64,000 nt of DNA from positions 186,001 to 250,000 of the IMG/VR virus record IMGVR_UViG_3300047445_000186, one strand, 5' to 3'. A program made the translations under genes and the position numbers. The notes under the pieces were generated by a model, which saw only the letters and a list, made by a program, of their open reading frames with translations, had not been told where the DNA came from and did not search any database. Each line of letters starts with the position of its first letter. Within the stretch, counting starts at the first letter, position 1. This document shows, in pieces, positions 2,779-62,369 of this stretch.

Positions 2779-2782
2779 AGTC

Positions 2783-2816
2783 ACAACCCGGTCTTCGCAA
2801 GTACCGGGTTGTTTAC
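2783..2816 (+). terminator. Probable intrinsic terminator after yeaH
   Basis: Stem ACAACCCGGT (2783-2792) / ACCGGGTTGT (2803-2812), short T tail. Confidence 0.6.
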
Positions 2817-2847
2817 TGAATATGATAGACTGATCATAAGGACTTAA

Positions 2848-4392
2848 ATGGACAAACTCGTCATTGACTCTCGCACCGACTGGACGCCTGAAATCCTGCG
2901 CCGTGCTTGGGACGAAATTGCAAAGATCTCGGTCGAAGAGCTCGAGCTGGTTCCTGGCAAGGACCTGTACCCGAATCAGTTCGAGATCGTTTCGGCCGAG
3001 CAGATGCTCGATGCGTACGCCTCGATCGGTCTGCCAGTGCACTACAATCACTGGAGCTTCGGCAAGGAATTCCTGCAGAACCAGAAGTCGTACGAGAAGG
3101 GCCAATCCGGCCTGGCGTACGAAATGGTCATTAACAGCAATCCTTGCGTGAACCTGTTGATGGAAGAGAACCTTGCGTACATGCAAGTGATGGTCATGGC
3201 GCACGCTGGCGTCGGCCATAACGCAGTGTTCGCGAACAACGTGTACTTCAAGGAGTGGACGGCTGCAGGTTCGATCATCGACTACATGCTGTTCGCACGT
3301 GACTACATCCGCCATTGCGAAGAGCGGTACGGCGAGCGTGAAGTTGAAGAGGTGCTCGATGCTGCGCACTCCCTCGCATCGCACGGGATTGATAAGTACA
3401 AGCGGAAGCATCGTCCGCATCTGAGCGAAGAGCAACGTCTGAAGAAGCTCATGAGCGCCGATGACCAGCGCCAGCGTGAACTCGACGTGATCATGCTGAA
3501 GACGTCGCTGAATCGCGCCGATGAAGAAGAACTGATGCTCGACGAAGGCGAATCGTTCGAAGACGGCGAAGAGAATCTGCTGTACTTCATCATGAAGAAG
3601 TCGCCGAATCTCGAGCGTTGGAAGCGCGAAGTTATCCGGATCGTGCACAAGATCAATCAGTACTTCTCGCCGCAAGGTCCGACGAAGACTCTGAATGAAG
3701 GTTGCGCCACGTTCTGCCACTGGTACATCATGAAGCGTCTCGAAGAAAAGGGTATTATCACCCCCGACGCGTACATGGCTTATCTGCACTCGCACAGCGG
3801 CGTGGTCTTCCAACCGTCGTACAAGAGCAAGTACTACAGCGGCCCGAACCCGTACGCCCTTGGGTTCAACATCCTGAAGGACGTGAAGCGGATCTGCGAA
3901 GGCGGTGAATGGATCGAGAAGTCTAGTGGTCGTGAATGGGTCGCTATCACCGACGAAGACCGCGCATGGATGCCACATCTGGTCGGCAAGCGCTGGCAAG
4001 ACATGATCAAGGAAGCTTCGTTCGAACACCGTGATGACTCGTTCATCCAGCAGTACCTGTCGCCGAAGGTCATTCGTGACATGAAGCTCTTCACTGTCGG
4101 AATTCGGTACTCGGAAGACGAAGACTACAAGCACCCGACTGCTACGGCTACGGTTGACGAGATTCACGATGACCTCGGTTACGCGAACATTCGGACTGCT
4201 CTGGCTCGCTCGAAGGAACGCGTGAACTACGTCCCGCAGATCGTGGTCGTGGACGCTGATTTGGAAGGTGACCGCACTCTCCATCTGCGGTACGATTCGT
4301 ACATGGGCCGTGAGCTCGATGAGTCTGACGCCGAAGAAGTCGTGCAGTACCTGGACTTCCTCTGGGGTTACCCAGTCAGGCTCGAAGCATGA
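2848..4392 (+). CDS. ycgB: SpoVR/YcgB-family protein
   Basis: Motifs YASIGLPVHYNHWSFGK, LAYEMVINSNP, AHAGVGHNAVFANN, TKTLNEGCATFCH and NPYALGF. Confidence 0.9.
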   Translation: MDKLVIDSRTDWTPEILRRAWDEIAKISVEELELVPGKDLYPNQFEIVSAEQMLDAYASIGLPVHYNHWSFGKEFLQNQKSYEKGQSGLAYEMVINSNPCVNLLMEENLAYMQVMVMAHAGVGHNAVFANNVYFKEWTAAGSIIDYMLFARDYIRHCEERYGEREVEEVLDAAHSLASHGIDKYKRKHRPHLSEEQRLKKLMSADDQRQRELDVIMLKTSLNRADEEELMLDEGESFEDGEENLLYFIMKKSPNLERWKREVIRIVHKINQYFSPQGPTKTLNEGCATFCHWYIMKRLEEKGIITPDAYMAYLHSHSGVVFQPSYKSKYYSGPNPYALGFNILKDVKRICEGGEWIEKSSGREWVAITDEDRAWMPHLVGKRWQDMIKEASFEHRDDSFIQQYLSPKVIRDMKLFTVGIRYSEDEDYKHPTATATVDEIHDDLGYANIRTALARSKERVNYVPQIVVVDADLEGDRTLHLRYDSYMGRELDESDAEEVVQYLDFLWGYPVRLEA

Positions 4393-22754: not shown

Positions 22755-24599
22755 TTAGGCACCGCACTTGCACATGCCGGCCTTCAGCTCGTCGATCTGA
22801 GCTTGCTGGGCCTTCACAGCTTCAACGAGCAGACCAACCAAGTTACCGTACGCGACCGACAGGTAACCTTCTTCGTGCGTTTCAACAGCTTCAGGAGCGA
22901 CAGCAATGACGTCCTGAGCGATCAGACCAGTACCACGGATACCGTCGTGAATGCGGGTGAAGTTCACACCAGTAAGCTTCATGACCTTAGCGATCGCGTC
23001 TTCGATCGGCGTAATGTCCTTCTTAGCGCGGCGGTCAGAGAAAGCCGTGACGTTACCCTGAGCGGTGATCGCGCCACCAGCGTAGATGTTACCCGTCATC
23101 GAAGCGCCACCTGCAACACGAAGAGCGCCGTTGTCAGCGTTCCAGTTACCGGAGTTTGCACCGCTCTGAGCGATCAGGTACTGACCGTACGCGGCGTTCG
23201 TTGCCACGGTGTTCACACCTTGGACGTTACCCGTATTGGAAACGATAGCACCACCACCAGAAGTGATCTGACCAGTTGCGTAGATCGCACCAGCGGTCGA
23301 GATCGCGGATGTTGCGTGCGTGAACGTGATGCCGTTGATGACCAGATTGCCGGACATCGTGGAACCATCGCGACGGACGTAGTTCGCGTTCGCCACGGTT
23401 GCTGAGACGTATCCAACTGCATTGCCGAGCTGGCCAACTTCAGTCAGATTCTGATTGTCCCAGAGCGTTCCCCATGCACCCCACGAGCCGACTGTACCGC
23501 TGTCATCGTTCACACGGAAGCGCAGACCGCGAGCAGCAGTTTCTTCAAGGTTCCAGTTCGCTGCGATCTGCAGACCACGAGCGCCTGCTGGAGCAGATTG
23601 ACCCATCAGCGTCAGACCAACTTGGTATTGGCCGATGTCAGACGTGAAGTAGCTGTCAAAGCCGGAGATCGAGTAAGCGGGGAATGTCGTTGGAGCTGGG
23701 GAAGCGGTGCCTGCATCACCGAAATCATAGAACAGAGTTGGACGGCCGGAGACGCCAGTCCAAGGCACGTTCGATGCGTTCGTTGCATTGATCGCGTTCG
23801 TGGCGTTATTTGCGTTGTTCGCAGTAGATGCGTTCGTCGCGAATCCGACGCTCAGGGCGGATTGGGATGCCCACGTTGGAGCAGCAGCACCACCAGAGAG
23901 CAGGACTTGCAGCGCAACACCAGCGGCTGTCGTACCGATCTGCGAAGTGCTAGCGCCGTAAGCGACACCACCAGCGATCGTCGAAGTAGAACCCGTACCA
24001 CCGCGCGTGACAGCGAGGGTACCAGTCGCCATGTTCGATGCGTTCTGATAAAAAGCGCCTTGTTGACCGTCAAGCAGGTCAGCGTCAAGAGTCGAACCAG
24101 CGCCGTCATTGCCAGCGTGCCAGACTTGTTGACCGAGCCATGTCAGACCCGCATCGAGAGACTGAACGCTGATTCCAAGCCCTGGAGTGAGGGTGCCACC
24201 AGTCGACCAATTCGTACCTTGACCGATATTCAGATTGCCGTTCAGACCTTCGAGAACGACTGGCAGCGCGCCGCCATTCTGATTGCCGATCAGGATACGC
24301 TGAACACCGGTGTTCTTCGTGACGCGCAGAACATCAGGAACTGTCAGTGGGCCTGTCAGGACACCACCACCTGTGCTCAGGTACAGATCAGGCGAAACGG
24401 CCGAGGTCCAACCTTGTTGAACTTGCGAGCCGAACTGGCCTGGGTTCGAGTCCTTGATGAACCCGAACAGGTACAGACCCGACGAACCGCCGATCGCGCT
24501 GTCTGTTTTGTAGAACAATGCACCGTCTGATGCTTGTCCTACGGTAGGCAGCGTCGGACCGTAAGAAATGAGTGCGCCGCCGTTGAGGATCTTTGCCAT
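22755..24599 (-). CDS. Tail fibre with C-terminal S74 chaperone
   Basis: Start MAKILNGG with GGAG RBS and TAAATA at 24635-24640; LDADLLDG, TLAVTRGGTG, FSDRRAKKDI...VAYGNLVGLLVEAVK. Confidence 0.85.
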   Translation of the reverse strand: MAKILNGGALISYGPTLPTVGQASDGALFYKTDSAIGGSSGLYLFGFIKDSNPGQFGSQVQQGWTSAVSPDLYLSTGGGVLTGPLTVPDVLRVTKNTGVQRILIGNQNGGALPVVLEGLNGNLNIGQGTNWSTGGTLTPGLGISVQSLDAGLTWLGQQVWHAGNDGAGSTLDADLLDGQQGAFYQNASNMATGTLAVTRGGTGSTSTIAGGVAYGASTSQIGTTAAGVALQVLLSGGAAAPTWASQSALSVGFATNASTANNANNATNAINATNASNVPWTGVSGRPTLFYDFGDAGTASPAPTTFPAYSISGFDSYFTSDIGQYQVGLTLMGQSAPAGARGLQIAANWNLEETAARGLRFRVNDDSGTVGSWGAWGTLWDNQNLTEVGQLGNAVGYVSATVANANYVRRDGSTMSGNLVINGITFTHATSAISTAGAIYATGQITSGGGAIVSNTGNVQGVNTVATNAAYGQYLIAQSGANSGNWNADNGALRVAGGASMTGNIYAGGAITAQGNVTAFSDRRAKKDITPIEDAIAKVMKLTGVNFTRIHDGIRGTGLIAQDVIAVAPEAVETHEEGYLSVAYGNLVGLLVEAVKAQQAQIDELKAGMCKCGA

Positions 24600-24666
24600 T
24601 TGTGCTCCAGGACTTCTGGGTAAATTCGATCCAGTATTTAGCCCGAACCTCCTCTCTGGACGAACT

Positions 24667-24688
24667 TGTAACGTCTGTTCGTTACAAT
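24667..24688 (+). promoter_or_regulatory. TGTAAC-N8-GTTACAAT promoter/operator
   Basis: Inverted repeat whose right arm overlaps a TACAAT -10 box, 21 nt upstream of 24710. Confidence 0.6.
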
Positions 24689-24709
24689 TGAACATTCATA
24701 GGAGAGTAC

Positions 24710-25762
24710 ATGGAACATATGCAATTGGGGCATCTGAACAACGATTTTCGGACGTGCCTGCATCATCTGAATGCGCACGGCATGACTGCGCACCCACGTG
24801 GAACGACCACGAAAGAGCTGCTGAATTACAACATTTCGCTCGGCGATCCACGCAATCGGATCATCAATTTCCCTGATCGGAAGACCAATCTGAAGTACCT
24901 GCTCGGTGAATTCTGCTGGTATCTCGCTGGTGACAACGACCCTGACAGCATCATCCCGTACAGCAAGTTCTGGGACAACATCCGCAATTCTGGCGACATG
25001 CCGGGATACGCGAAGGGCACGATCAATTCGAACTACGGCTATCGTCTGTTCGGTCTGGACAACGAGATGCTCGTTCCGCATGTCGAGAAGGCAATGACTC
25101 CGTACGGTTGCGATGAGACCGGTGCAGTCGTGATCGAGCCGCATGAGACGACAGTGATTCGTGGTCAGAGCCAGTGGGCAGCAGTAGTCGACATGCTCAA
25201 GGCCGACAAGGATTCGCGTCAAGCGATCATGAACATCCATCGCCCAAGTGATCGTCACGTCGGGAACAAGGACGTTGCATGTACCCTGACCCTGCAGTTC
25301 TTCATTCGTGAGAACAAGTTGTTCATGATCACGAACATGCGATCGAACGACATCATTCTCGGCTTCACGAACGACGTGTTCCAGTTCACGATGCTGCAAG
25401 AAGGCCTGATGGTTCAACTGCGTGAAACGTACCCTGAGCTTGAGCTCGGCGCGTACTACCACAATGCAGGTTCGATGCACATCTACGACAGGCACTTCGA
25501 GATGGCGAACAAGATCGTCGCTGACGAACGAGCACTCGAGCTGTCAATGGTTCCAATGGATCGATTCGACTCCGAGATTCTGGACAGCCTGGTCGAGATT
25601 GAAACTGAGTGGCGCAAGGACGGCATGAAGAAGGACTTCAACTTCAATCTGTACACCTCGTACCAGAAGCTCACACCGTACTGGCAGAACCTGATTCAAA
25701 TGTGCTTCGCCGAAGATGGTGAAGCAATGCACGCCGTGTTCGGCATCCCAGAGGAGCATTGA
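24710..25762 (+). CDS. T4 gp42-like dCMP hydroxymethylase/hydroxylase (thymidylate synthase fold)
   Basis: INSNYG, DSRQAIMNIHRPS, catalytic ACT, MRSNDIILGFTND (Asp at the dCMP-specifying position, like gp42 D179) and NAGSMHIYDRHF. Confidence 0.85.
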   Translation: MEHMQLGHLNNDFRTCLHHLNAHGMTAHPRGTTTKELLNYNISLGDPRNRIINFPDRKTNLKYLLGEFCWYLAGDNDPDSIIPYSKFWDNIRNSGDMPGYAKGTINSNYGYRLFGLDNEMLVPHVEKAMTPYGCDETGAVVIEPHETTVIRGQSQWAAVVDMLKADKDSRQAIMNIHRPSDRHVGNKDVACTLTLQFFIRENKLFMITNMRSNDIILGFTNDVFQFTMLQEGLMVQLRETYPELELGAYYHNAGSMHIYDRHFEMANKIVADERALELSMVPMDRFDSEILDSLVEIETEWRKDGMKKDFNFNLYTSYQKLTPYWQNLIQMCFAEDGEAMHAVFGIPEEH

Positions 25763-29716: not shown

Positions 29717-30006
29717 CAACGATCTCGTCCCGCAAGGGGACGACTTCAAATAGCCTGACGTTCGATGACCTAACCGACGCAGAGCTCGAGCTGATCTCGG
29801 CCTTGGTCTACAATGTACGACTCGGCAAGGGAAGTATCTATCGCGAAGCTGCGTACGATCTGATGAACAAGATCGAATCCTTCAAGCAGGACGATGACTA
29901 CATCAGCCGAGCCAGTGCACTCGTGGACCCTGAATGTGATGTGCTTGACAGCCATGGCACGCCAGCGTTCACGATCCGTAATCAAGACTACGAAGTCGTC
30001 GTATGA
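29713..30006 (+). CDS. Hypothetical protein
   Basis: ATGA overlaps on both sides. Confidence 0.65.
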   Translation: MTTISSRKGTTSNSLTFDDLTDAELELISALVYNVRLGKGSIYREAAYDLMNKIESFKQDDDYISRASALVDPECDVLDSHGTPAFTIRNQDYEVVV

Positions 30007-30590
30007 GCATAAACAAATTTCTGATCGAGGGTCTCGATCGTCTCGGCAAAGACACCCTGATCGATGGGATCATGCACCAGCGCGGGTACCATCAGGTCCT
30101 GCACTTCTCGAAGCCACGTCATCTCGCTCGGTACATGCCAAGCCCAACGGGCATGACTGCAGCCGAGATGGAGAGTGTCTCGTTCAAGGAGTACCAAGAG
30201 CAATCGTTCAGGACAATGTTCGCGATGCTCCGCAATCTGCCGTACACTCAGATCATTTGCAATCGGGCGCACCTTGGCGAATGCGTGTACGCTCCCCTGT
30301 ACCGCGGGTACGCAGGCGAGTACGTGTTCGACATCGAGAAGCAGTTCTTGAAGGGCGATTCGCGAACCATTCGTCTGATCCTGCTCACTGAAGACTTCAG
30401 CGTGTCGAAGCACTTCGTCGATGACGGTGAGTCATTCGACATCGCAAAGCGCGAGCAAGAGCAGGACCTGTTCAAGGCTGCGTTCGAGAAGTCGTGCATC
30501 AGTGACAAGCGAATCGTGAACGTCACCGATCGCGAAACTGGCGGCTATCGCTCGAAGCAAGACATTCTGCTTGAGGTCACCTCACTATGA
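30003..30590 (+). CDS. dNMP (thymidylate-kinase-like) kinase
   Basis: P-loop IEGLDRLGKDT, ICNRAHLGECVYAPLYRG. Confidence 0.75.
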   Translation: MSINKFLIEGLDRLGKDTLIDGIMHQRGYHQVLHFSKPRHLARYMPSPTGMTAAEMESVSFKEYQEQSFRTMFAMLRNLPYTQIICNRAHLGECVYAPLYRGYAGEYVFDIEKQFLKGDSRTIRLILLTEDFSVSKHFVDDGESFDIAKREQEQDLFKAAFEKSCISDKRIVNVTDRETGGYRSKQDILLEVTSL

Positions 30591-31371: not shown

Positions 31372-31394
31372 CTCCTTTGGATTTGGGGAACTCT

Positions 31395-31835
31395 ATGACA
31401 CTAATATTTGAAATCAAAGCGGCCCAATTGGCCGCTCGTAAAGAACGTCGGGCAGCGGATGTTGCTGTGCTGACGACCCTGATCGGTGAGGCGGAAATCA
31501 TCGGCAAGAACGATGGAAATCGCGCAGTCACGGACCAGGAAGTGCAGGCCGTAATTAAGAAGTTCATCAAGAATATCGATGAGGTTCTGAAGGTCGTAAA
31601 TCCTGGGTCTGATCAATTCACGACCGCTCAGGAAGAGAAGATTCTTCTGAGCACGTTCCTGCCTGTGCAGCTCTCTGAAGCTGACCTGCGGCTGATCATT
31701 CAAACCGTGATCGATGCACATCAGCTCGTGGCTCCAAAGGGTCTCGGTGTTCTGATGAAGGAACTGAAGGACTCGCATAACGGCACGTACGATGGTGCGC
31801 TTGCCTCGAAACTTGCAAAGGAATTGTTGAAGTGA
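31395..31835 (+). CDS. GatB/YqeY-domain protein
   Basis: EEKILLSTFLPVQLSEADL, GVLMKELK and YDGALAS match the YqeY pattern. Confidence 0.8.
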   Translation: MTLIFEIKAAQLAARKERRAADVAVLTTLIGEAEIIGKNDGNRAVTDQEVQAVIKKFIKNIDEVLKVVNPGSDQFTTAQEEKILLSTFLPVQLSEADLRLIIQTVIDAHQLVAPKGLGVLMKELKDSHNGTYDGALASKLAKELLK

Positions 31836-33001
31836 AAGTTGGTGTAGTTAAACTTGGTGCTCGCATTACCTGGGAAACCGACGCAGCTGTCGGTCCTGGT
31901 GAAGCGATCTCGATCTGCAAGGCACTCACGCGAGGTGGGGCTGAGGTCCATGTGTTCACGAAGATTCTGGCGAAGGACACGCTCGATCCGTCGATTCAGT
32001 GGCACAATACGGTTGGCAGCGATGCACGTTCAATCCATGCAGGTCAAGACCTCGACACGACCGGTCTCGATGCTCTGCTCGTGATTAACGGGAATGTGAA
32101 CTTCTTCGGTGGCGCCGAAGATCGTGCTCAGATTCTGAATTACACGATCATCAATCGGTTCGCGGGTCCGGTGATCTACGTGATGTGCGACCCTGAACTG
32201 CCGATGCTGCAGATCTGGGAGAACGTCTCGAAGAAGCAAGTCGATCCGAAGTACAACTGGGAGAACGTGTACGCTGAGTCGGACATTCGTGTCACGAAGC
32301 CGATCAATGTGCTCTGCCAGCCGTTCAATGTTCAGGCAATGCAGGAAACGTGGAAGAGCAAGAAGGGCGCTGTGCCACTCGGCACGATGTTCCACTTCCC
32401 GATGGAACGCTTCCCGCTCCTGAACGAGTGGCTAGATTACGCCGAAACTCCGGCAGTCGATCTGCTCTACGGCGGTACGGCTCGTGGTGGGCGCCGCATT
32501 CCGAATCTGTACAAGTGGTACTGCGGTCTGCCTGAAGATCTGAACGTCGAAATCTTCGGCAAGATCGACAATGAAGACTTCGAGAAGCACAACAAGATCG
32601 GGAAGCTTCCAGTGAAACGGTACCCAACGTTCACGGGTATGGTGAAGTACTCTGAAGTGCTACCAAAGATGAACAACGCTCTTGCGCATCTGGTCACTGG
32701 CGATCCGTCGTACGAAACGCTCGATCTGATTCCTCAACGCGTTGCCGAGTGCATCGCCGCTGGGAACATCGTGTTCATCGACGCGAACATCGACAAGAGC
32801 CGTCGGATCTATCCTGTTGGAACCGAGGCGCATGACTTCCTGTACGTGCAGACGCAAGATGAACTCGTCGAGCGACTGCGTGTGCTGAAGGAAGAGCCAA
32901 GTCTGCGCTCCACTCTGTGGCAGCAACAGACGATCGCAACGAACTTCAACGCCGACACGTTCACAAAGTCGTTGGTCACGAAGATCGCGGAGTTCGTATG
33001 A
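31832..33001 (+). CDS. bgt: T4 beta-glucosyltransferase-family DNA glycosyltransferase (GT-B)
   Basis: Colinear with T4 BGT: LLVINGNVNFFGG, DLLYGGTARGGRR, VEIFGK, PTFTG, FIDANIDKSRRI. The sugar donor is not established. Confidence 0.85.
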   Translation: MKVGVVKLGARITWETDAAVGPGEAISICKALTRGGAEVHVFTKILAKDTLDPSIQWHNTVGSDARSIHAGQDLDTTGLDALLVINGNVNFFGGAEDRAQILNYTIINRFAGPVIYVMCDPELPMLQIWENVSKKQVDPKYNWENVYAESDIRVTKPINVLCQPFNVQAMQETWKSKKGAVPLGTMFHFPMERFPLLNEWLDYAETPAVDLLYGGTARGGRRIPNLYKWYCGLPEDLNVEIFGKIDNEDFEKHNKIGKLPVKRYPTFTGMVKYSEVLPKMNNALAHLVTGDPSYETLDLIPQRVAECIAAGNIVFIDANIDKSRRIYPVGTEAHDFLYVQTQDELVERLRVLKEEPSLRSTLWQQQTIATNFNADTFTKSLVTKIAEFV

Positions 33002-34042: not shown

Positions 34043-34729
34043 ATGCACTTCAACACCCCTACACTGGTCACTCTGACCGCCCCATCTTGCGCTGGCAAGA
34101 GTTACCTGCTCGAGGCAATGGTTGACAGCCTTGGCATGCAGCGTATTGTGTCCACCACTGATCGCGCTCCACGAGCCGGTGAAATCGAAGGTGTGCACTA
34201 CAACTTCATCACGACGAACGAATCTCTGCAGTACGAAGCTGAAGGAAAGTTCGCCGAGCTTGTGACGTTCAATGGCACTCGGTACGGTGTCACTCACGAG
34301 GAAATGGAGAAGAAGCTCGTTCCTGGTGCACCAGCTCCGATCGTGATTCTCGAGCCGAACGGTGTGAACATCTACCGCCAGTACTGTGGTTCGAAGAACT
34401 GGTCGATCTTCACCGTGTTCGTCTCGACGCCTGAAGCCGTTCGCCTTGAACGCCTCGCTGCTCGTACCACTGCTGATCTGCTGAACATTGCAGTGAATGG
34501 CGGTGATCTGGAGAAGAGCCTTCTTGCACGCGGCAATTTGTTCGACCGGTTCGAGAAGATCGTTCACGCGAACAACAAGCGCCTGAAGGCGATCATCGAA
34601 CAAGAACGTCTCTGGGCTGCCACGAACCTGTGGGATGCGCAGATCACAGGTCAAGACCTGAACGTTGCACTCTCGCACCTGAAGCAATCGATCGCCAGCC
34701 GTAACGCCCGCTCCGCAATCTACGCCTAA
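34043..34729 (+). CDS. gmk: Guanylate-kinase-family NMP kinase
   Basis: APSCAGKS P-loop, STTDRAPRAGEIEGVHYNF and TFNGTRYG. Confidence 0.85.
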   Translation: MHFNTPTLVTLTAPSCAGKSYLLEAMVDSLGMQRIVSTTDRAPRAGEIEGVHYNFITTNESLQYEAEGKFAELVTFNGTRYGVTHEEMEKKLVPGAPAPIVILEPNGVNIYRQYCGSKNWSIFTVFVSTPEAVRLERLAARTTADLLNIAVNGGDLEKSLLARGNLFDRFEKIVHANNKRLKAIIEQERLWAATNLWDAQITGQDLNVALSHLKQSIASRNARSAIYA

Positions 34730-35101: not shown

Positions 35102-35383
35102 ATGACAAAAGCAATCAACAAAGCACTGCAAACCCCTGAAGCCCAAGCTCTCCTGGCCGCTGGCCTGAAGCTGAAGTCGACCAAGCGTCAACTCGCGAAC
35201 GGCACGATCGCCCTGACCGGCCGCGTGAAGAAGCGCGCTGTGTCGTACAAGATCACGGCCACTGGTTCGGTCTTGAGCAATGAGTTCGTCGCTCGTCGCG
35301 TTCTCGAATCCACCGAAGGTCAACTGTACCGCGCTGGTCTCCGCGCTGCTGCTGAACTGCTCGCCAAGCGCAAGGCTGCCTGA
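35102..35383 (+). CDS. Hypothetical basic protein
   Basis: RBS AAGGAA; strong codon bias. Confidence 0.75.
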   Translation: MTKAINKALQTPEAQALLAAGLKLKSTKRQLANGTIALTGRVKKRAVSYKITATGSVLSNEFVARRVLESTEGQLYRAGLRAAAELLAKRKAA

Positions 35384-35904
35384 TGCAGTTGTACACCGCT
35401 CCCGAGCCCGTACCGTTCGGCCTTGATCCAGTTCCGTCTGTGTTCTTGGCTGGTTCGATCGAGCAGGGTACCGCAATTGACTGGCAGCACGAAGTGCTGG
35501 ACGAGATCAGCGATCTGCGGGTAGTGGTGTTCAACCCACGACGCAAGGCATGGGACGCGTCGTGGGTGCAATCAATCGACAACCCTCAGTTCAACAAGCA
35601 AGTGAACTGGGAGCTCGACAATCTGTCTCGTTCAGACATCGCGTTCTTCTACTTCGATCCAAAGACGAAGTCGCCAATCACGCTCATGGAACTTGGTTTC
35701 ATGCTTGGCCAATCCATGCAAGGTGGATGGTACGAGATCATCGTGGTTTGCCCAGACGGCTTTTGGCGTCAAGGGAATGTCGAGATCATGTGTGCTCGAG
35801 CCGTCGTGGCTGATGGCACTCGCGTTTCGTACGTGACCGAGCTTGACGCAGGGATTTCGATTCTACGCGACGACATTGAACGCCAGCTGGAACGCGCGAT
35901 TTAA
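35383..35904 (+). CDS. Nucleoside 2-deoxyribosyltransferase-like protein (NDT/DNPH1/MilB superfamily)
   Basis: SVFLAGSI, FNPRR, QVNWELDNL and SPITLMELG. Confidence 0.8.
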   Translation: MQLYTAPEPVPFGLDPVPSVFLAGSIEQGTAIDWQHEVLDEISDLRVVVFNPRRKAWDASWVQSIDNPQFNKQVNWELDNLSRSDIAFFYFDPKTKSPITLMELGFMLGQSMQGGWYEIIVVCPDGFWRQGNVEIMCARAVVADGTRVSYVTELDAGISILRDDIERQLERAI

Positions 35905-42806: not shown

Positions 42807-43027
42807 CCTGGCTGAAGCTCTACCGCTGGTGGAAAGGCGGTCGGTGGGTGAAACACGAGAACAAGTGGTACCTCGCTGACGTGAACGGCTACATCCGCGG
42901 CGAGTGTCTGAGCGACGAAGGGCGACCATCGTACTTCTCATGCCACGCCGATTTCAAGGGGAACCAAGCGGTCGAAGACTACCGCGCCCCGTACAAGAAT
43001 TCCCCATTCAACAAGAAAGCAAAATGA
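42803..43027 (+). CDS. Hypothetical Trp-rich protein
   Basis: ATGA overlaps. Confidence 0.55.
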   Translation: MTWLKLYRWWKGGRWVKHENKWYLADVNGYIRGECLSDEGRPSYFSCHADFKGNQAVEDYRAPYKNSPFNKKAK

Positions 43028-43485
43028 GCTACCGCCTTTACACCTTCGTGAACCACATCTACATGAGCGAGAAGCAGTTCGGTATCCAGACCGCGCACCT
43101 CGTCTCGACGATGATGAACAACGTCGCCGAACTCAAGGGCGAAGACATGCGGTCGTACCACAAGGTGCATGCATGGGCCGCTGAGTCACCAACGATCATC
43201 ATGTGTCAGGGTGGGAACGTTGCAATGCTGACTGAGTTGTACGAGAAGTTGAAGCCTCTCGCAGCCGATCTGCAGTTGCCCGTCGCGAAGTTCCACGAAG
43301 ATGAACAGAGCCTTGGTGGTGTAATCACCTGCGTCGGGGTTCTCGTTCCTGAGTACCTGTTCGACGCTGAAGTGGTATGGATCGCTGGTTCTCCAGTGTT
43401 CACGATCACGCAAGACAACCCGCGCCCTGCAACTCTGCTCGAGAACGAGTTCCTGGGGATCGTGAAGATCGCGCGTCTCGCGTAA
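43024..43485 (+). CDS. PTH2-like (peptidyl-tRNA hydrolase 2 fold) protein
   Basis: GIQTAH, a W..ESPTII segment, FHEDEQSLGGVITCVG. Confidence 0.55.
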   Translation: MSYRLYTFVNHIYMSEKQFGIQTAHLVSTMMNNVAELKGEDMRSYHKVHAWAAESPTIIMCQGGNVAMLTELYEKLKPLAADLQLPVAKFHEDEQSLGGVITCVGVLVPEYLFDAEVVWIAGSPVFTITQDNPRPATLLENEFLGIVKIARLA

Positions 43486-44438: not shown

Positions 44439-45179
44439 ATGTCAACAAACCTCGCACTTCAGTGCATTGAACGTCAAATCGAAGCGCTTCGTGCGCTTCC
44501 CACCCTCGTCGAAACCTCGGAGGAATACAAGAAGATCGTCACGATCGTCACTGAGGTCGCGTTGAGCGAGCACGGAGCTCGTGTCCTGCTTGCCGGCGTC
44601 GGCAAGAACTCGAACATCGCGTCCAAGGTCAGTCAGACCATGGCCAGCCTCGGCATTCCGTCGATGCCGTTGAATGTCTCGCACCTTGGTCACGGCGACT
44701 ACGGCTTCATTGGGAAGTACGATGTGATCATTCACATCAGCCGTTCTGGCATGACCCGTGAAATGCTGGAAGGGATCGAGCACATCTCGCTCATTCGCCC
44801 ATTCGTGACGCAAATCCTGATTCACTGCAAGGCCGGCAAGGTCAAGAACGAGCATGCCGAGATTGAGCTCTTCCTGCCTGATGTCCTCGAAGGCGATGAG
44901 CATGGTCTTGCACCAACAACCTCGACGACCGCGCTGCTCTGCATTCTGGATTGCATCTCGGTTCAAGCATCGGCGAACATCGAGTTCGAACGTCTGGACT
45001 TCCTGAAGTTCCACCCTGATGGCGCACTCGGCGAAATGCTGAAGGCCGAGAAGGCGAAGAAGGTTCACACTGATATTTCGGCCGCCGTTCCTGTCGAAGG
45101 CGTGCCAATCAATGATCCAGCGATCGCAGCATTGGTCACTCCTGAATCCGCTGAAGCAGCACGAAAGTTGGTTGTATGA
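44439..45179 (+). CDS. kdsD: SIS-domain D-arabinose-5-phosphate isomerase (KdsD/GutQ-like, no CBS pair)
   Basis: GVGKNSNIASK, HGDYGFI, ISRSGMTRE, APTTSTT and FHPDGALG. Confidence 0.85.
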   Translation: MSTNLALQCIERQIEALRALPTLVETSEEYKKIVTIVTEVALSEHGARVLLAGVGKNSNIASKVSQTMASLGIPSMPLNVSHLGHGDYGFIGKYDVIIHISRSGMTREMLEGIEHISLIRPFVTQILIHCKAGKVKNEHAEIELFLPDVLEGDEHGLAPTTSTTALLCILDCISVQASANIEFERLDFLKFHPDGALGEMLKAEKAKKVHTDISAAVPVEGVPINDPAIAALVTPESAEAARKLVV

Positions 45180-45337
45180 ACGTCGTAAACATTGGCCTCA
45201 AGACCTTTGACGACGCGGGCCTGGATTGGGATGCGTTCGTGTCGCTGAAACACGAGAATGGAAACACTGAAGACATCCGCCTCACTGAACTTATTGAACG
45301 GATCGTAGAGCGGAAGATCAAGGAAAAACAAGAATGA
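45176..45337 (+). CDS. Hypothetical protein (53 aa)
   Basis: ATGA overlaps with both kdsD and the NTP transferase gene. Confidence 0.6.
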   Translation: MNVVNIGLKTFDDAGLDWDAFVSLKHENGNTEDIRLTELIERIVERKIKEKQE

Positions 45338-46944
45338 ATATCGTGATTGTTGCGGGTGGGCTTGGTTCCCGCCTCGCTCCACTGACAAACAACGTGCCGA
45401 AGTTCCTCGTGAACATCGGGAAGAACACGGGGTATGTGGAGCAAGTTCGGTACTGGGCGAAGCAAATTGATTTTTCTCCGTTCAGCGAAACAAATGACAC
45501 GCTCACCGTGATCGTTCACAGCGCGTACGAAGCTCTGATCAATGCGTACCACAAGGTGTACTTCCCGAACATTCCGCTGATCGTGCAAACGGTTGACGTG
45601 GCGAACGGCTCTGCACACGCGATCTTGAGTACATGTCGTCATTTGAACGGCAAGCCAGTGGTCTTCCAGTGGTGCGACGTTATGCCTGCCGTTCCGCTTC
45701 CAGATTTCGACAAGGAACAGAACGCGATCTTCACGAACTACGATCACTCAAATCGCTATGGCCTTTCGTATGCGAAGACTCCAGGCGGTGGGTGCATTCC
45801 TACACCTCAGCCGGATGGCAAGGGTGGTGTGTTCGGCATGTACTACATCGCGAACTTCCACACGAGTGTGACGTCCCATGATGGTGAAGACTTCGTTGAC
45901 GTGATCACCCAGTACGGCAAGATCCAAGAAGTGAAGCTTGATGGCATCATCGACTGGGGCGACATGCCTAAGCTGAATCAGACCCGTGATACGGCTGATG
46001 CCGCACGTGAGTTCAACAGCATCTCGGTCCAAGGGAACTTGGTCATGAAGTCCGCGCTGAACAAGCAGGGCGAAACGCTGATCGCTCGTGAGATCAATTG
46101 GTACCGCAAGGTCCACAAGGATGGGTACGGCGTTTCGATCCCTGAGATCTGGCCAGCAGATGACGGCAAGAGCTTCATCATGGACAAGGTCGAAGGCGAG
46201 CCGATCTTCAAGGTCTGGCCTGCACTTGATCCTCAAGGACGTGGAATCGTTCTGCGGAAGATCTTCGAGCAGCTCGATCGCCTCCATGACGATGGTGATC
46301 TGTTCGCCGTAGGGACTGACACTGTTCTGCGTGACGTGAAGATCGAAGCTTGTGACAAGCTCCTTGCTCGCTATCGCGAAATCAAGGACGTGATCAAGGC
46401 GTTCGGCCCTATCACGCACGTGAACGGTCTGTACATCGGCGATCTGAATCCAGAGGTCACGATCCACAAGCTGTACGCACGTCTGCACGAGCACTATGCT
46501 GGCACAGAAGATTACAGCATGATCCACGGTGATCTGCAGATGTCGAACAGCATGATCGATACCAGCAATCTCGAAGTGTCGTTCATCGACCCACGCGGTT
46601 ATTTCGGCAAGAGCGAGCTCATGGGTCTGCCAGATTACGACATCGCGAAGGTTTACTACAGCCTGAGCGGGTACGATCTGTTTAACTACAGCCGCGATTT
46701 CCACATCAAGGAACTCGCTGACGGACATCTGGAGTTCGAGATTCCGAAGCCGAATCTCGATGGATGCGAAGACGTGATGGGTGAGCGATTCTGGCACCAA
46801 CATCGCCTGTGGCTCGCGGTGATCTGGATCGGTCTTGCAGGGTACATCAAGAACGACCCGGTGAAATCACTGTGCGCGCACTACCACGGCCTCGCGATCG
46901 CGGAACAAATCTTCCGCGACACGTTCGATCCGTTCAAGCCATGA
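45334..46944 (+). CDS. Bifunctional sugar nucleotidyltransferase + APH/choline-kinase-family kinase
   Basis: N-terminal VAGGLGSRLAPLT...PKFLV and WCD; C-terminal IHGDLQMSN, FIDPRG and YDIAK. Confidence 0.85.
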   Translation: MNIVIVAGGLGSRLAPLTNNVPKFLVNIGKNTGYVEQVRYWAKQIDFSPFSETNDTLTVIVHSAYEALINAYHKVYFPNIPLIVQTVDVANGSAHAILSTCRHLNGKPVVFQWCDVMPAVPLPDFDKEQNAIFTNYDHSNRYGLSYAKTPGGGCIPTPQPDGKGGVFGMYYIANFHTSVTSHDGEDFVDVITQYGKIQEVKLDGIIDWGDMPKLNQTRDTADAAREFNSISVQGNLVMKSALNKQGETLIAREINWYRKVHKDGYGVSIPEIWPADDGKSFIMDKVEGEPIFKVWPALDPQGRGIVLRKIFEQLDRLHDDGDLFAVGTDTVLRDVKIEACDKLLARYREIKDVIKAFGPITHVNGLYIGDLNPEVTIHKLYARLHEHYAGTEDYSMIHGDLQMSNSMIDTSNLEVSFIDPRGYFGKSELMGLPDYDIAKVYYSLSGYDLFNYSRDFHIKELADGHLEFEIPKPNLDGCEDVMGERFWHQHRLWLAVIWIGLAGYIKNDPVKSLCAHYHGLAIAEQIFRDTFDPFKP

Positions 46945-60882: not shown

Positions 60883-61431
60883 ATGACACTCACAGACAAA
60901 AGCAAGTTCCTCGCGTTCTTGCTGAGGCATAAGCCGCAAGAAGCAAACCTGATTCTCGACAAGCAGGGCTGGTGCCCGATCGCTGACATCACAGCGAACA
61001 CCGAGATCACCTTCGAAGATTTGATCTCGATTGTCGACACCGATAAAAAGGGTCGGTACTCGTTCGATCAGCCGAAGCAGTCCTCGCAAGCGCCGACAAA
61101 AATCCGCGCAAATCAAGGGCACAGCACCGACAAGGTCAAGCTCTCGTTCAAGACGGCCGTTCCTCCAGTCGTTCTGTACCATGGCACTTCAGCCGAAGCT
61201 GCCGTTCAAATCTGCCGCATTGGCCTGCTCGCGATGAGCCGCCATCACGTCCATCTCTCTGCTGACATCGAGACTGCCCGCACCGTCGCATCCCGGCGTA
61301 AGGGCAAGACAGCGATGTTCCTCGTGGACGCTAAGCGAATGCTCGCCGACGGGTTGAAGTTCCAGCTCTCTGAGAATGGAGTCTGGTTGGTTGACGCCGT
61401 ACCCGCTAAGTACCTTACACAGGAAACTTAA
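60883..61431 (+). CDS. kptA: RNA 2'-phosphotransferase (KptA/Tpt1)
   Basis: SKFLAFLLRH, IRANQGHS, LYHGT, RHHVHLS and SENGVWLV. Confidence 0.92.
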   Translation: MTLTDKSKFLAFLLRHKPQEANLILDKQGWCPIADITANTEITFEDLISIVDTDKKGRYSFDQPKQSSQAPTKIRANQGHSTDKVKLSFKTAVPPVVLYHGTSAEAAVQICRIGLLAMSRHHVHLSADIETARTVASRRKGKTAMFLVDAKRMLADGLKFQLSENGVWLVDAVPAKYLTQET

Positions 61432-62369
61432 TGGATAACATGTACACCTTCGAAGACGAATACCTGGATCTGCTCGATTTCATTCTGAAGCGCGGCGAAG
61501 ACCGCGGTGATCGCACTGGAACTGGAACACGCGCCGTGTTCGGCCAGCGCCTGCAGATTGATTTGAAGCAGGGTTTTCCGATCATGACGACCAAGAAGGT
61601 CGGTCTGAAGTCAATCATCTCTGAGCTCCTCTGGTTCGTTGAAGGCAGTGGTGATGAGCGGCGTCTGTGTGAGATTCTGTACGGTACCCGTGACGCTGCA
61701 AAGCGCACAATCTGGACCGACAATGCGAACTCCTCGTACTGGAAGCCGAACGCAGAATTTGAGGGTGACCTCGGACGCGTCTACGGTGTTCAGTGGAGGC
61801 ACTGGAAGAGTCTTACACTGAAAGAATCCGGGGCCCACGTCGATCATTCTGGTGGTTCCGAGACACATTTCGACGCGAAGGTTCTCGTGCAAGAGGTCGA
61901 TCAACTGAAGCGAGTGATCGATACCCTGAAGACGAACCCGACCGATCGTCGTCTCGTCCTGACGGCCTGGAACCCAGGCGAACTCGGCTCGATGGCTCTG
62001 CCACCATGCCACATGTTCGCGCAGTTCTTCTTGTCGAACAAGAACGAGCTGAGCTGCCAAATGTACCAGCGCTCGGTTGACGTGTTCCTCGGCTTGCCGT
62101 ACAACATCGCGTCGTACGCAGCACTGACGCACATGATTGCTCGAGTGATCGGTGCTGAGGTTGGTGAGCTGATCATGGTTCTCGGCGACACGCACATTTA
62201 TCAGAATCACATCGATCAAGTGAAGCTCCAGCTCAGCCGCGAACGATTCGATCTGCCAAAGCTCGTGATCAGCGGTGAGCAAAAATCCATTGACGATTTC
62301 AAGCTCGCCGATTTCTCCCTTGAAGGTTACCAGTGTCACGAAGCGATCAACGCCACAATGGCGATCTGA
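61431..62369 (+). CDS. thyA: Thymidylate synthase (canonical, dUMP-specific)
   Basis: DRTGTGT, ELLWF, PTDRR, MALPPCH, YQRSVDVFLGLPYNIASY (Asn) and DTHIYQNH. Confidence 0.95.
   Translation: MDNMYTFEDEYLDLLDFILKRGEDRGDRTGTGTRAVFGQRLQIDLKQGFPIMTTKKVGLKSIISELLWFVEGSGDERRLCEILYGTRDAAKRTIWTDNANSSYWKPNAEFEGDLGRVYGVQWRHWKSLTLKESGAHVDHSGGSETHFDAKVLVQEVDQLKRVIDTLKTNPTDRRLVLTAWNPGELGSMALPPCHMFAQFFLSNKNELSCQMYQRSVDVFLGLPYNIASYAALTHMIARVIGAEVGELIMVLGDTHIYQNHIDQVKLQLSRERFDLPKLVISGEQKSIDDFKLADFSLEGYQCHEAINATMAI

What the first reader, a model, noticed from the sequence alone, without database searches (positions are those of the whole stretch)
24710..25762. Second thymidylate-synthase-fold enzyme with a dCMP-type Asp, an internal insertion and a C-terminal extension
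Seen: RSNDIILGFTND has Asp where the canonical ThyA at 61431 has Asn (RSVDVFLGLPYN). Relative to T4 gp42 as I recall it, there are roughly 30 extra residues after NSNYGYRLFG and roughly 70 extra at the C-terminus. Established: this Asn/Asp position sets dUMP versus dCMP preference. Inference: the enzyme modifies dCMP, but hydroxymethylation versus hydroxylation cannot be read from motifs. The extra segments may bind partners such as the dNMP kinase.
Basis: partly seen in the sequence, partly recalled or inferred. Interest (0 to 1): 0.6.

Follow-up and report, generated by a model that had tools for sequence, protein, structure and literature searches.

The report
Jumbo-phage dCMP hydroxymethylase with sugar module
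This gene of a 332-kb soil (rhizosphere) phage most likely makes 5-hydroxymethyl-dCMP, the first step in replacing cytosine in the phage DNA with a sugar-decorated base. It sits beside a T4-like DNA glycosyltransferase and arabinose-activating enzymes, so it is an ordinary enzyme type in an interesting, untested pathway.

Summary
Window 24710-25762 (+) encodes a 350-aa thymidylate-synthase-fold protein with Asp where the window's canonical ThyA (61431-62369) has Asn. Relative to T4 gp42 it has about 34 extra internal residues and about 63 extra C-terminal residues.

Published signatures separate methylation, hydroxymethylation, 5-hydroxylation and ribo/deoxy preference. This protein carries the complete folate-dependent dCMP hydroxymethylase signature (E. 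coli numbering):
- Asp at L143, three residues before the catalytic Cys
- Ser-x-Tyr
- Asp169 retained
- Asp at N177
- Arg/Ser at the deoxyribose discriminators

The signature was invariant in all 120 retrieved homologs examined.

The C-terminal extension is the helical domain of MilA, the best structural match (Z 30 against about 22 for all other structures). The insertion is a variable β-hairpin at a known indel hotspot, not a conserved partner site.

Context supports a glycosylated-hmC pathway:
- a conserved YorR/Tmk-like nucleotide kinase
- a T4 β-glucosyltransferase homolog (E 8e-30)
- homologs of the RB69 arabinose-5-P isomerase and sugar-kinase/NDP-sugar pyrophosphorylase

In 11 related viral records this module alternates, without overlap, with a UDP-galactopyranose mutase. 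I found no gp56-type dCTPase. I file it as a new member of a known enzyme kind. The predicted arabinosyl-hmC product would be new.

The parts
24710..25762 (+). TS-fold enzyme (350 aa, P0001), predicted folate-dependent dCMP 5-hydroxymethylase with MilA-type architecture
   Evidence: ORF. PF00303 8e-22. PDB by sequence: MilA 7e-27, T4 gp42 1e-16. AF2 model pLDDT 93, pTM 0.90. MilA Z 30.2, rmsd 2.7 A over 289 residues.
25271..25282 (+). Codons for Asp188-Val-Ala-Cys191: water-activating Asp (E. coli L143, T4 Asp145) and the catalytic Cys (C146)
   Evidence: Alignment; both invariant in 120 homologs. Their roles are taken from PMC6400193 and PMC13326640.
25028..25036 (+). Codons for Ser107-Asn-Tyr109, the Ser-x-Tyr pair of the hydroxymethylation signature (T4 Ser94/Tyr96)
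   Evidence: (invariant). The signature is defined in PMC6400193.
25340..25375 (+). Codons for residues 211-222 (the RSND...TND motif): Arg166/Ser167 equivalents, Asp214 (= Asp169, retained) and Asp222 (= Asn177 position, dCMP type)
   Evidence: Controls read as published: RB69 gp48 has Asn at 169, SP8 dUMP HMase and the window's ThyA have Asn at 177.
25061..25168 (+). Lineage-variable insertion (residues 118-153), predicted as beta-strands 122-129, 140-142 and 146-153
   Evidence: Gapped in 70-90% of family members and 8-24 residues long in relatives. Block pLDDT is 88-93. It lies at the same site as a 30-residue insert in the window's ThyA.
25520..25759 (+). C-terminal helical domain (residues 271-350), equivalent to the extra C-terminal domain of MilA
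   Evidence: Gap-free and conserved across the family. Helices at 288-303, 316-319, 323-334 and 337-344. The model range 4-346 aligns to MilA 4-318. The MilA domain is described in PMC5175136.
30003..30590 (+). YorR/thymidylate-kinase-like nucleotide kinase, candidate hm-dCMP kinase, always syntenic with the TS homolog
   Evidence: phrog_761 1.6e-5, the same PHROG as RB69 gp45. Conserved P-loop. AF2 pLDDT 92.6. 3kb2 YorR Z 15.7, Tmk Z about 13. Present in all 20 family loci that have enough flank.
31832..33001 (+). Homolog of T4 DNA beta-glucosyltransferase (389 aa)
   Evidence: PF09198 3.7e-17. PDB 1bgt 8.3e-30 over residues 72-364 against 52-325 of 351. phrog_7922 4e-46.
34043..34729 (+). 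Guanylate-kinase-like NMP kinase
   Evidence: PF00625 4.8e-15. phrog_1815 1.4e-28. Syntenic in most relatives.
44439..45179 (+). SIS-domain sugar-phosphate isomerase, homolog of RB69 gp55 (arabinose-5-phosphate isomerase)
   Evidence: phmmer against RB69 gp55 1.4e-52. SIS domain. Role in RB69 from PMC13326640 Table 1.
45334..46944 (+). Fusion of an NDP-sugar pyrophosphorylase (N-terminal) and a sugar kinase (C-terminal), homolog of RB69 gp53+gp52 and DLP3 gp82
   Evidence: phmmer 8e-21 to gp53 and 1.3e-45 to gp52. PF00483 covers residues 4-106 and PF01636 covers 246-420.
42904..43485 (+). Hydrolase of unknown specificity, a weak candidate for the sugar-phosphate phosphatase step
   Evidence: phrog_3668 'hydrolase' 2.6e-22. 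No Pfam or PDB match. The assignment rests on position only.
61431..62369 (+). Canonical thymidylate synthase ThyA (the comparison gene)
   Evidence: PF00303 6e-100 and TIGR03284 1.2e-94. Signature Leu143/Asp169/Asn177.

Best explanation
The gene encodes a folate-dependent deoxycytidylate 5-hydroxymethylase (5hm-dCMP synthase) built on the MilA-type long architecture.

Proposed mechanism, by homology with T4 gp42: Cys191 attacks C6 of dCMP, and Asp222 reads and protonates the cytosine N3/N4 face. Glu67 activates 5,10-methylene-THF, whose pterin is positioned with the help of Asp214. After THF leaves, Asp188 together with Ser107/Tyr109 places a water on the exocyclic methylene instead of allowing hydride transfer, which gives 5hm-dCMP. 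Arg170 and Ser212 set the preference for the deoxy sugar.

The product is then presumably phosphorylated by the syntenic YorR/Tmk-like kinase (30003-30590) and/or the Gmk-like kinase (34043-34729) and incorporated into DNA by the phage T4-type polymerase. In DNA it would be O-glycosylated by the T4 beta-glucosyltransferase homolog (31832-33001). The likely sugar donor is a phage-made NDP-arabinose from the isomerase (44439-45179) and the kinase/pyrophosphorylase fusion (45334-46944).

Shown here: the fold, the residue signature, the homologies, the synteny and the co-occurrence. Inferred: the enzyme activity, the kinase substrate, the sugar identity, and whether cytosine is fully replaced.
For: - Signature: Asp188, Cys191, Ser107-x-Tyr109, Asp214, Asp222, Glu67, Arg170, Ser212, His257 and Tyr259 are all present and invariant in 120 homologs and in all 20 IMG/VR family loci. 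The same alignment reads four controls correctly: RB69 gp48 hydroxylase E/N/D, T4-type gp42 D/D/D, SP8 dUMP HMase D/D/N, the window's ThyA L/D/N. The rules come from PMC13326640, PMC6400193 and PMC5175136.
- Relatives: MilA at 7e-27 and T4 gp42 at 1e-16 rank ahead of all thymidylate synthases by sequence. MilA scores Z 30.2 against at most 22.5 for every other chain, including the flavin dCMP monooxygenase 9iqc at Z 21.9.
- Context: a T4 BGT homolog at 8e-30, a Tmk/YorR-like kinase syntenic in every relative, and RB69 arabinose-pathway homologs at 1e-52 and 1e-45.
- Co-occurrence: the BGT homolog, the isomerase and the kinase/pyrophosphorylase occur together in exactly 5 of 11 related records and in this genome. 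The other 6 records all carry UDP-galactopyranose mutase instead.
- D/D/D-signature homologs in Lactobacillus phage ATCCB and Klebsiella phage 17-11 also sit next to annotated glucosyltransferases.
Against: - There is no biochemical or DNA-composition data for this phage or any family member.
- The Asp169->Asn rule is recent. It was validated in one direction only: every D169N enzyme tested hydroxylates.
- Arg127, the second phosphate-binding Arg contributed by the partner subunit, is an invariant Gln.
- I found no gp56-type dCTPase, MazG, dUTPase or gp1-type dNMP kinase in the 94%-complete genome, so complete replacement of C is not supported.
- The deep phylogeny is unresolved, so assignment rests on residues and structure rather than on clade membership.
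- The sugar pathway of RB69 is itself partly a computational inference.
- The perfect co-occurrence may largely reflect two sub-lineages rather than independent events.
Confidence: 0.82

Rival explanations
1. It is a flavin-dependent 5-hydroxy-dCMP synthase of the RB69 gp48 / DLP3 gp80 type, and the arabinose genes serve arabinosyl-5-hydroxycytosine as in RB69.
For: The genome carries close homologs of the RB69 arabinose-5-P isomerase and of the kinase/pyrophosphorylase. Every arabinosylated cytosine proven so far derives from 5hoC. Asp at N177 and an acidic residue at L143 are shared with those enzymes.
Against: - The diagnostic Asp169->Asn change is absent: Asp214 is invariant in 120 homologs.
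- The folate-site Trp80 equivalent is kept (Trp88), whereas RB69 gp48 does not align a Trp there (Ala, Ile).
- The flavin enzyme 9iqc scores Z 21.9 over residues 3-271 only, against 30.2 for MilA.
- RB69 gp48 matches the query only at 2.7e-7.
- The partner transferase is a homolog of T4 BGT, an hmC-specific enzyme, and not of the RB69 arabinosyltransferases. RB69 gp3 and gp46:47 have no homolog here.
Confidence: 0.05
2. It is a dCMP methyltransferase that makes 5-methyl-dCMP, in the manner reported for Xanthomonas phage XP12.
For: The dCMP-type Asp222 and retained Asp214 are compatible with a folate-dependent methyl transfer. The closest cultured relatives by topoisomerase infect Ralstonia, Pseudomonas and Xanthomonas hosts.
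Against: The position three residues before the catalytic Cys is Asp, not the hydrophobic residue that excludes water in methyl-forming enzymes. In T4 dCH even the D145N mutant abolishes product. The Ser-x-Tyr water-holding pair is present. A DNA O-glycosyltransferase homolog would have no acceptor on 5mC. No XP12 reference sequence was available to me for comparison.
Confidence: 0.03
3. It is a ribonucleotide (CMP) hydroxymethylase like MilA/BcmA, feeding a free-base or nucleoside product together with the nearby nucleoside-deoxyribosyltransferase-like protein (35383-35904), rather than a DNA precursor.
For: MilA is the best sequence and structure match and shares the C-terminal domain. A PF15891-type protein lies 10 kb downstream in this phage and in several relatives, which is reminiscent of the MilA/MilB pair.
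Against: The two residues that give MilA its CMP preference, Lys133 and Ala176, are Arg170 and Ser212 here, the deoxy-type residues. The MilA A176S/K133R double mutant switches to dCMP. The genomic setting is a lytic jumbo phage replication block with a DNA glycosyltransferase homolog.
Confidence: 0.04
4. It is a dUMP hydroxymethylase (SPO1 gp29 / SP8 type) that leads to 5hmU-derived thymidine hypermodification.
For: It shares the Gln at the Arg127 position and a long C-terminus with the SP8 enzyme. The deep tree does not exclude a common origin.
Against: Asp222 occupies the Asn177 position in all family members, whereas SP8 and the SP8-like IMG/VR homologs L047 and L052 have Asn. In the tree SP8 groups with phage G gp319 and a Pelagibacter phage, not with this family. 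The genome keeps a canonical ThyA and a dCMP deaminase.
Confidence: 0.02

Closest known systems
T4 gp42 deoxycytidylate 5-hydroxymethyltransferase (PDB 1b49/1b5e/6a9b)
   Same: Every catalytic and specificity residue matches: Asp at Cys-3, catalytic Cys, Ser-x-Tyr, Asp171/Asp169, Asp179/Asn177 position, Glu60, and the Arg/Ser deoxy discriminators. In both phages the gene accompanies a DNA beta-glucosyltransferase, a canonical td/ThyA and a T4-type replication core.
   Different: Identity is only about 26%. gp42 has 246 aa, with no C-terminal helical domain and no 36-residue insertion. Arg124 of T4 (Arg127 of E. coli) is Gln here. This genome lacks homologs of the T4 partner enzymes gp1 and gp56.
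MilA, CMP 5-hydroxymethylase of Streptomyces rimofaciens (PDB 5b6d/5jnh/5jp9)
   Same: It is the best match by sequence (7e-27) and by structure (Z 30.2, 30% identity over 289 aligned residues), and the match includes the extra C-terminal helical domain. Both have Asp at the L143 and N177 positions.
   Different: MilA's ribose-specifying Lys133 and Ala176 are Arg and Ser here. MilA works in antibiotic biosynthesis with the N-glycosidase MilB, not in DNA precursor synthesis. The query has about 37 extra residues in the small-domain loop.
5-hydroxy-dCMP synthases (RB69 gp48, DLP3 gp80, RL38J1 gp216; HY126 enzyme, PDB 9iqc)
   Same: They share the TS fold, the dCMP-type Asp and an acidic residue at L143. 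They also share the cluster logic: a TS homolog plus a Tmk-like 'nucleotide kinase', NDP-sugar synthesis genes and DNA glycosyltransferases. The sugar genes are directly homologous, and UDP-galactopyranose mutase appears in relatives as it does in RL38J1.
   Different: Those enzymes carry Asp169->Asn and use a flavin and O2, whereas the query keeps Asp169 and the folate-site residues. Their transferases are GT-B enzymes unrelated to T4 BGT. The predicted linkage here is through a CH2-O bridge rather than a direct C5-O ether.
Long-form TS homologs of other phages (Bacillus phage G gp319; Ralstonia jumbo phage RsoM2USA gp10)
   Same: These are the closest named phage proteins, at 33-37% identity, with the same D/D/D signature. 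Phage G gp319 (348 aa) aligns over query residues 13-332, so it shares the C-terminal domain. RsoM2USA is also the closest cultured relative by topoisomerase, at 46%.
   Different: Neither is characterised; both are annotated as hypothetical protein or thymidylate synthase. RsoM2USA gp10 is the short form (278 aa).

Membership tests
Thymidylate synthase superfamily (Pfam PF00303) | TS fold and a profile match above the curated cut-off | tested here: met
   PF00303 scores 78.1 bits against a cut-off of 24.3. The AF2 model aligns to many TS chains at Z about 22.
Thymidylate synthase superfamily (Pfam PF00303) | Catalytic Cys146, Glu58, and nucleotide-binding Arg166, Ser167, His207 and Tyr209 | tested here: met
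   Cys191, Glu67, Arg211, Ser212, His257 and Tyr259 are invariant in 120 homologs.
Thymidylate synthase superfamily (Pfam PF00303) | Obligate homodimer contributing Arg126' and Arg127' to the partner's phosphate site | tested here: inconclusive
   The Arg126 equivalent (Arg170) is present, but the Arg127 equivalent is an invariant Gln171. Dimerisation was not modelled.
Canonical thymidylate synthase ThyA (dUMP to dTMP) | Asn177 for uracil and a hydrophobic Leu143 that excludes water | tested here: not met
   Both positions are Asp, whereas the window's own ThyA has Leu and Asn. All NCBIfam ThyA equivalogs score far below their cut-offs.
dCMP 5-hydroxymethylase (T4 gp42 type, EC 2.1.2.8) | Asp at the Asn177 position (cytosine recognition) | tested here: met
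   Asp222. Rule.
dCMP 5-hydroxymethylase (T4 gp42 type, EC 2.1.2.8) | Asp or Glu three residues before the catalytic Cys, plus the Ser-x-Tyr water-holding pair | tested here: met
   Asp188 and Ser107-Asn-Tyr109, invariant. Signature as defined in PMC6400193.
dCMP 5-hydroxymethylase (T4 gp42 type, EC 2.1.2.8) | Folate-site Asp169 (T4 Asp171) and Trp80 (T4 Trp82) retained | tested here: met
   Asp214 and Trp88.
dCMP 5-hydroxymethylase (T4 gp42 type, EC 2.1.2.8) | Deoxyribose preference residues Arg (T4 Arg123) and Ser (E. coli Ser167) | tested here: met
   Arg170 and Ser212. Rule from the MilA paper.
dCMP 5-hydroxymethylase (T4 gp42 type, EC 2.1.2.8) | Catalytic conversion of dCMP plus CH2-THF to 5hm-dCMP plus THF | not testable with these tools
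   This needs an enzyme assay.
5-hydroxy-dCMP synthase (flavin-dependent, RB69 gp48 type) | Asp169->Asn substitution | tested here: not met
   Asp214 is retained in the query and in all 120 + 20 family members. The RB69 gp48 control shows Asn in the same alignment.
MilA-type CMP hydroxymethylase | Extra C-terminal helical domain | tested here: met
   Model range 4-346 aligns to MilA 4-318 with Z 30.2. Helices at 288-344.
MilA-type CMP hydroxymethylase | Lys133 and Ala176, which confer ribonucleotide preference | tested here: not met
   The query has Arg170 and Ser212 instead.
dUMP hydroxymethylase (SPO1/SP8 type) | Asn at position 177 together with Asp at position 143 | tested here: not met
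   Position 177 is Asp, whereas the SP8 control has Asn.
T4-like glycosyl-hmC DNA modification system | DNA hmC glycosyltransferase | tested here: met
   The protein at 31832-33001 is homologous to T4 BGT at 8.3e-30 over nearly its full length. Its acceptor and donor were not tested.
T4-like glycosyl-hmC DNA modification system | dCTPase (gp56) that excludes dCTP, and gp1 dNMP kinase | tested here: not met
   There is no phmmer or PHROG-profile match and no MazG or dUTPase. Other kinase types are present instead. The genome is estimated to be 94% complete.

The most novel reading that the evidence does not exclude
This rhizosphere jumbo-phage lineage builds genuinely hydroxymethyl-bridged glycosyl-cytosines with unusual sugars. 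This phage and five relatives would carry arabinosyl-5-hydroxymethylcytosine, with a T4-BGT-like enzyme using phage-made NDP-arabinose. Sister genomes that carry UDP-galactopyranose mutase would carry a galactofuranosyl-hmC variant. Ara-hmC was originally claimed for RB69 and has since been withdrawn in favour of ara-5-hydroxy-C, so this would be the first real case. It would also show that the same sugar modules have been combined with both the folate (hmC) and the flavin (hoC) branches of the TS superfamily.
Probability: 0.4. Interest if true: 0.75.

Novelty: new member of a known kind. Interest (0 to 1): 0.55.

Why it matters
The enzyme on its own is an expected type. It shows that published residue signatures now allow substrate and chemistry to be called for TS-fold enzymes in uncultured phages, and that the long MilA-type architecture is used by a large, uncharacterised phage family. 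More than 1,700 homologs were found, many of them on 150-375 kb contigs.

The wider interest is the pathway. A hydroxymethylase-signature enzyme is linked to arabinose-activating genes and a T4-BGT-like transferase, and in sister genomes to a galactofuranose gene. This predicts DNA bases that have not been described. They are relevant to restriction, CRISPR and type IV defence evasion, and to enzymes useful for 5hmC labelling. The prediction is directly testable with two or three recombinant proteins.

Tried and rejected
- Nucleotide search of the phage collection with the locus found nothing; there is no close cultured relative.
- A maximum-likelihood tree of 30 TS homologs left the deep nodes open, with many long branches. 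I therefore do not use clade membership as evidence. I note only that the SP8 dUMP hydroxymethylase did not join the family.
- MilA could not be put in the tree because no referenced sequence was available. I used the PDB sequence and structure comparisons instead.
- Searching the ENA and NCBI contigs of P0003 and P0065 as whole records failed because they are not held. I used IMG/VR relatives instead.
- Searches for a gp56-type dCTPase, MazG, trimeric dUTPase, gp1-type dNMP kinase, an RB69 gp51-type phosphatase and the RB69 arabinosyltransferases in the genome were all negative. These are profile or sequence negatives in a 94%-complete record, not proof of absence.
- The hydrolase at 42904-43485 gave no Pfam or PDB match, so its role as the sugar phosphatase is only positional.
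- The promoter and terminator scan around the gene was at background level.
- I did not run the large representative-protein search, because the word search and family scans left nothing open.
- I ran no complex prediction, because I make no binding claim.
Full report
**The observation**

Window 24710-25762 (+) is an open frame of 350 codons. It matches the thymidylate synthase family PF00303 at 8e-22 over residues 14-280 and several phage 'thymidylate synthase' PHROGs. It falls far below the cut-offs of every NCBIfam ThyA equivalog.

The window lies at 186001-250000 of a 331,776-bp viral record estimated to be 94% complete. That record has exactly two TS-fold genes: this one and a canonical ThyA at window 61431-62369, which scores 6e-100.

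Its last residue, Asp222, aligns with Asn177 of E. coli ThyA, where the window's own ThyA has Asn.

Against a T4-type gp42 (246 aa), the query differs in three places:
- It has 36 residues where gp42 has two, directly after the NSNYGY segment.
- It has a 7-residue extra loop just before that segment.
- It has about 63 extra C-terminal residues.

**What the residues say**

Three papers give testable rules.
- PMC13326640, in E. coli numbering:
  - Asn177 selects dUMP and Asp selects dCMP.
  - Leu143 goes with methyl products and Asp/Glu with non-methyl products.
  - Asp169->Asn marks the flavin- and O2-dependent 5-hydroxy-dCMP synthases of RB69, DLP3, RL38J1 and nine further enzymes that were tested.
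- PMC6400193 defines the hydroxymethylation signature of T4 gp42:
  - The signature is an Asp three residues before the catalytic Cys (D145N is dead) plus a Ser-x-Tyr pair that holds the catalytic waters.
  - Asp171/Asp169 contacts the pterin.
- PMC5175136: MilA prefers CMP because it has Lys133 and Ala176 where dCMP- and dUMP-using enzymes have Arg and Ser. The double mutant switches to dCMP.

The query has Asp188-x-x-Cys191, Ser107-x-Tyr109, Asp214 (=169), Asp222 (=177), Glu67 (=58), Trp88 (=80), Arg170 and Ser212. All of these are invariant in the 120 homologs retrieved and in 20 further IMG/VR family loci.

The same alignment reads the controls as published:

| Enzyme | Position 143 | Position 169 | Position 177 |
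|---|---|---|---|
| RB69 gp48 (5-hydroxy-dCMP synthase) | Glu | Asn | Asp |
| T4-type gp42 (dCMP hydroxymethylase) | Asp | Asp | Asp |
| SP8 (dUMP hydroxymethylase) | Asp | Asp | Asn |
| Window's ThyA | Leu | Asp | Asn |
| Query | Asp | Asp | Asp |

The signature is therefore that of a folate-dependent dCMP hydroxymethylase. It is not that of a hydroxylase, methylase, CMP enzyme or dUMP enzyme. One departure is unexplained: the Arg127 equivalent is an invariant Gln, as it also is in SP8 and in phage G gp319.

**The two extra segments**

An AlphaFold2 model built from 63 homologs is confident (pLDDT 93, pTM 0.90).

MilA is the best solved relative by sequence (7e-27, against 1e-16 for T4 gp42 and 1e-13 or weaker for thymidylate synthases). 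It is also the best by structure. Foldseek gives 1e-19. VIA-align gives Z 30.2, rmsd 2.7 A, 289 residues aligned and 30% identity, with model 4-346 matched to chain 4-318. Every other entry scores Z 22.5 or less, including the flavin dCMP monooxygenase 9iqc at 21.9 over residues 3-271.

The C-terminal 80 residues form helices. They are gap-free and conserved across the family and correspond to the extra five-helix domain of MilA. In MilA that domain lies away from the active site and is needed for solubility. Phage G gp319 and mycobacteriophage homologs align through it as well. It is therefore an inherited feature of a 'long-form' subfamily, not a novelty of this gene.

The internal insertion behaves quite differently:
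- It is predicted as beta-strands.
- It is gapped in 70-90% of family members.
- It is 8-24 residues long in relatives against 36 here.
- It lies at the small-domain loop, where the window's own ThyA also has a 30-residue insert.

I read it as a lineage-variable surface hairpin. Nothing supports a conserved partner-binding role, and I tested no binding.

**Phylogeny**

A tree of 30 sequences left the deep nodes open. The family does not group with the SP8 dUMP hydroxymethylase. SP8 joins phage G gp319, which is an Asp177 enzyme, so the Asn/Asp state has switched within clades. Clade membership is therefore weak evidence in either direction.

**Context**

The phage has a T4-type replication core: homologs of gp43, gp41, UvsX, gp44, gp39 and gp4. 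Its closest cultured relatives by topoisomerase are Ralstonia phage RsoM2USA (46%), Pseudomonas phage pf16 and Xanthomonas phages. The gene is found in rhizosphere metagenomes.

The gene opens a rightward block after a leftward tail-fibre gene. The order TS-homolog, DinG-like helicase, AAA ATPase, small kinase is conserved in all 20 family loci that have enough flank.

That small kinase (30003-30590) shows the following:
- It has a Tmk/dNK-type P-loop.
- It hits phrog_761, the family of RB69 gp45.
- It folds (pLDDT 92.6) like B. subtilis YorR (Z 15.7) and thymidylate kinases (Z about 13).

Those are the same top matches reported for the 'nucleotide kinase' of the DLP3 and RB69 modification clusters.

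Further downstream lie:
- a homolog of T4 DNA beta-glucosyltransferase (31832-33001; PF09198 3.7e-17, PDB 1bgt 8.3e-30 over nearly its full length, phrog_7922 4e-46)
- a guanylate-kinase-like protein (34043-34729)
- a PF15891-type protein (35383-35904)
- a homolog of RB69 gp55 arabinose-5-P isomerase (44439-45179; 1.4e-52)
- a fusion homologous to RB69 gp53 plus gp52, carrying NTP-transferase and APH kinase domains (45334-46944)

In RB69 and DLP3 the last two are assigned to UDP-arabinose synthesis.

In the alignment, the T4 BGT segments around the residues I recall as the catalytic base (Asp100) and the phosphate-binding arginines (Arg191, Arg195) are matched by Asp and Arg in the query. Those residue roles come from my memory of the T4 BGT structure papers and were not checked here.

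**Co-occurrence**

I searched eleven related IMG/VR records as whole records. The BGT homolog, the isomerase and the kinase/pyrophosphorylase fusion are all present in the same five records. UDP-galactopyranose mutase is present in exactly the other six and is absent from this genome. One such relative also has an NAD-dependent epimerase next to the mutase.

All of these genomes carry the same hydroxymethylase signature. One conserved base-modifying enzyme is therefore followed by one of two alternative sugar modules. The pattern may reflect two sub-lineages, so it counts as few independent events.

**What is missing**

I found none of the following: gp56-type dCTPase, MazG, dUTPase, gp1-type dNMP kinase, RB69 gp51-type phosphatase, or RB69-type arabinosyltransferase. 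A dCMP deaminase is present. How, or whether, dCTP is excluded remains open.

**Verdict**

The gene is most likely a dCMP 5-hydroxymethylase with MilA-type architecture (confidence about 0.8), which makes it a new member of a known enzyme kind. All proven arabinosyl-cytosines derive from 5-hydroxycytosine, and the earlier ara-hmC assignment for RB69 is now regarded as an error. The combination seen here would therefore predict a base not yet described, arabinosyl-hydroxymethylcytosine. I rate that reading at about 0.4.

Noticed in passing
Related IMG/VR records G001-G011 (loci L024-L042), and window 31832-33001 and 44439-46944: Two mutually exclusive sugar modules follow the same hydroxymethylase-signature enzyme. 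Five records and this genome have the T4-BGT-like transferase, the arabinose-5-P isomerase and the kinase/pyrophosphorylase fusion. The other six have UDP-galactopyranose mutase, with an epimerase next to it in L021. The transferase that serves the mutase-type genomes was not identified.
   Followed up: partly
L015:274-1272 (Mycobacterium phage Candle gp74; also Send513, Papyrus and related phages): This long-form TS homolog has an odd signature: Arg at the Glu58 position, Asn at the Asp169 position (the flavin-hydroxylase mark), but Asn at position 177 (uracil type). It could be a dUMP-directed, non-folate enzyme. It is annotated only as thymidylate synthase.
   Followed up: no
L043 and L051 (IMG/VR contigs), match at 10001 onward: These are TS homologs of 504 aa with the D/D/D signature and a C-terminal extension of about 280 residues, which suggests fusion to a further domain. 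L047 and L052 are 377-aa SP8-like enzymes with Asn177. L046 has Asn at the L143 position.
   Followed up: no
window 35383-35904 (+): A PF15891 (nucleoside 2-deoxyribosyltransferase-like) protein matches the uncharacterised PDB entry 4mcj at 8e-19 and is syntenic in several relatives. Next to a MilA-like enzyme it recalls the MilA/MilB pair. It might instead hydrolyse canonical dNMPs in a genome that lacks a recognisable dCTPase.
   Followed up: partly
window 59398-63362 (+): The canonical ThyA is flanked by a circularly permuted YpsA SLOG protein (59398-60021), an RNA 2'-phosphotransferase Tpt1/KptA (60883-61431, 9e-45) and a Macro-domain protein (62841-63362). Together these form a nucleotide / ADP-ribose-related cluster.
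   Followed up: no
window 49266-50132 (+): The phage encodes an Fpg/Nei-type DNA glycosylase (Fapy_DNA_glyco 4e-20 plus H2TH). This is unusual in a phage predicted to carry modified cytosines.
   Followed up: no
window 1405-4392 (+), with the ORF running in from before the window start to 1327: DUF444 (3e-111) and SpoVR (2e-131) homologs are present. These are the YeaH/YcgB-type partners of PrkA found in bacterial stress operons. The upstream 652-aa ORF was not scanned.
   Followed up: no
window 56645-58401 (+) and 52133-56060 (+): Two adjacent DnaJ-domain paralogs follow the topoisomerase II large subunit (52133-54037) and its topoisomerase IV subunit-A-like partner (54684-56060).
   Followed up: no
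Genome C1:128844-129176 (outside the window): A 389-aa open frame gives a weak Glycos_transf_1 match (1.1e-5, below the cut-off). It is a possible second glycosyltransferase.
   Followed up: no
window 22755-24695 (-) and 24696-24709: As listed, the tail-fibre ORF starts only 14 bases from the TS-homolog start on the opposite strand. Its true start is probably an internal Met about 32 codons downstream (judged from the sequence, not tested). That would leave a divergent intergenic region of about 110 bases, in which the sigma-70 scan found nothing above background.
   Followed up: partly
window 31377-31835 (+): A YqeY-like protein (PF09424, 3.6e-15) overlaps the start of the BGT homolog by 4 bases. 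It accompanies the BGT homolog in several relatives but also occurs in a mutase-type genome (L042).
   Followed up: no
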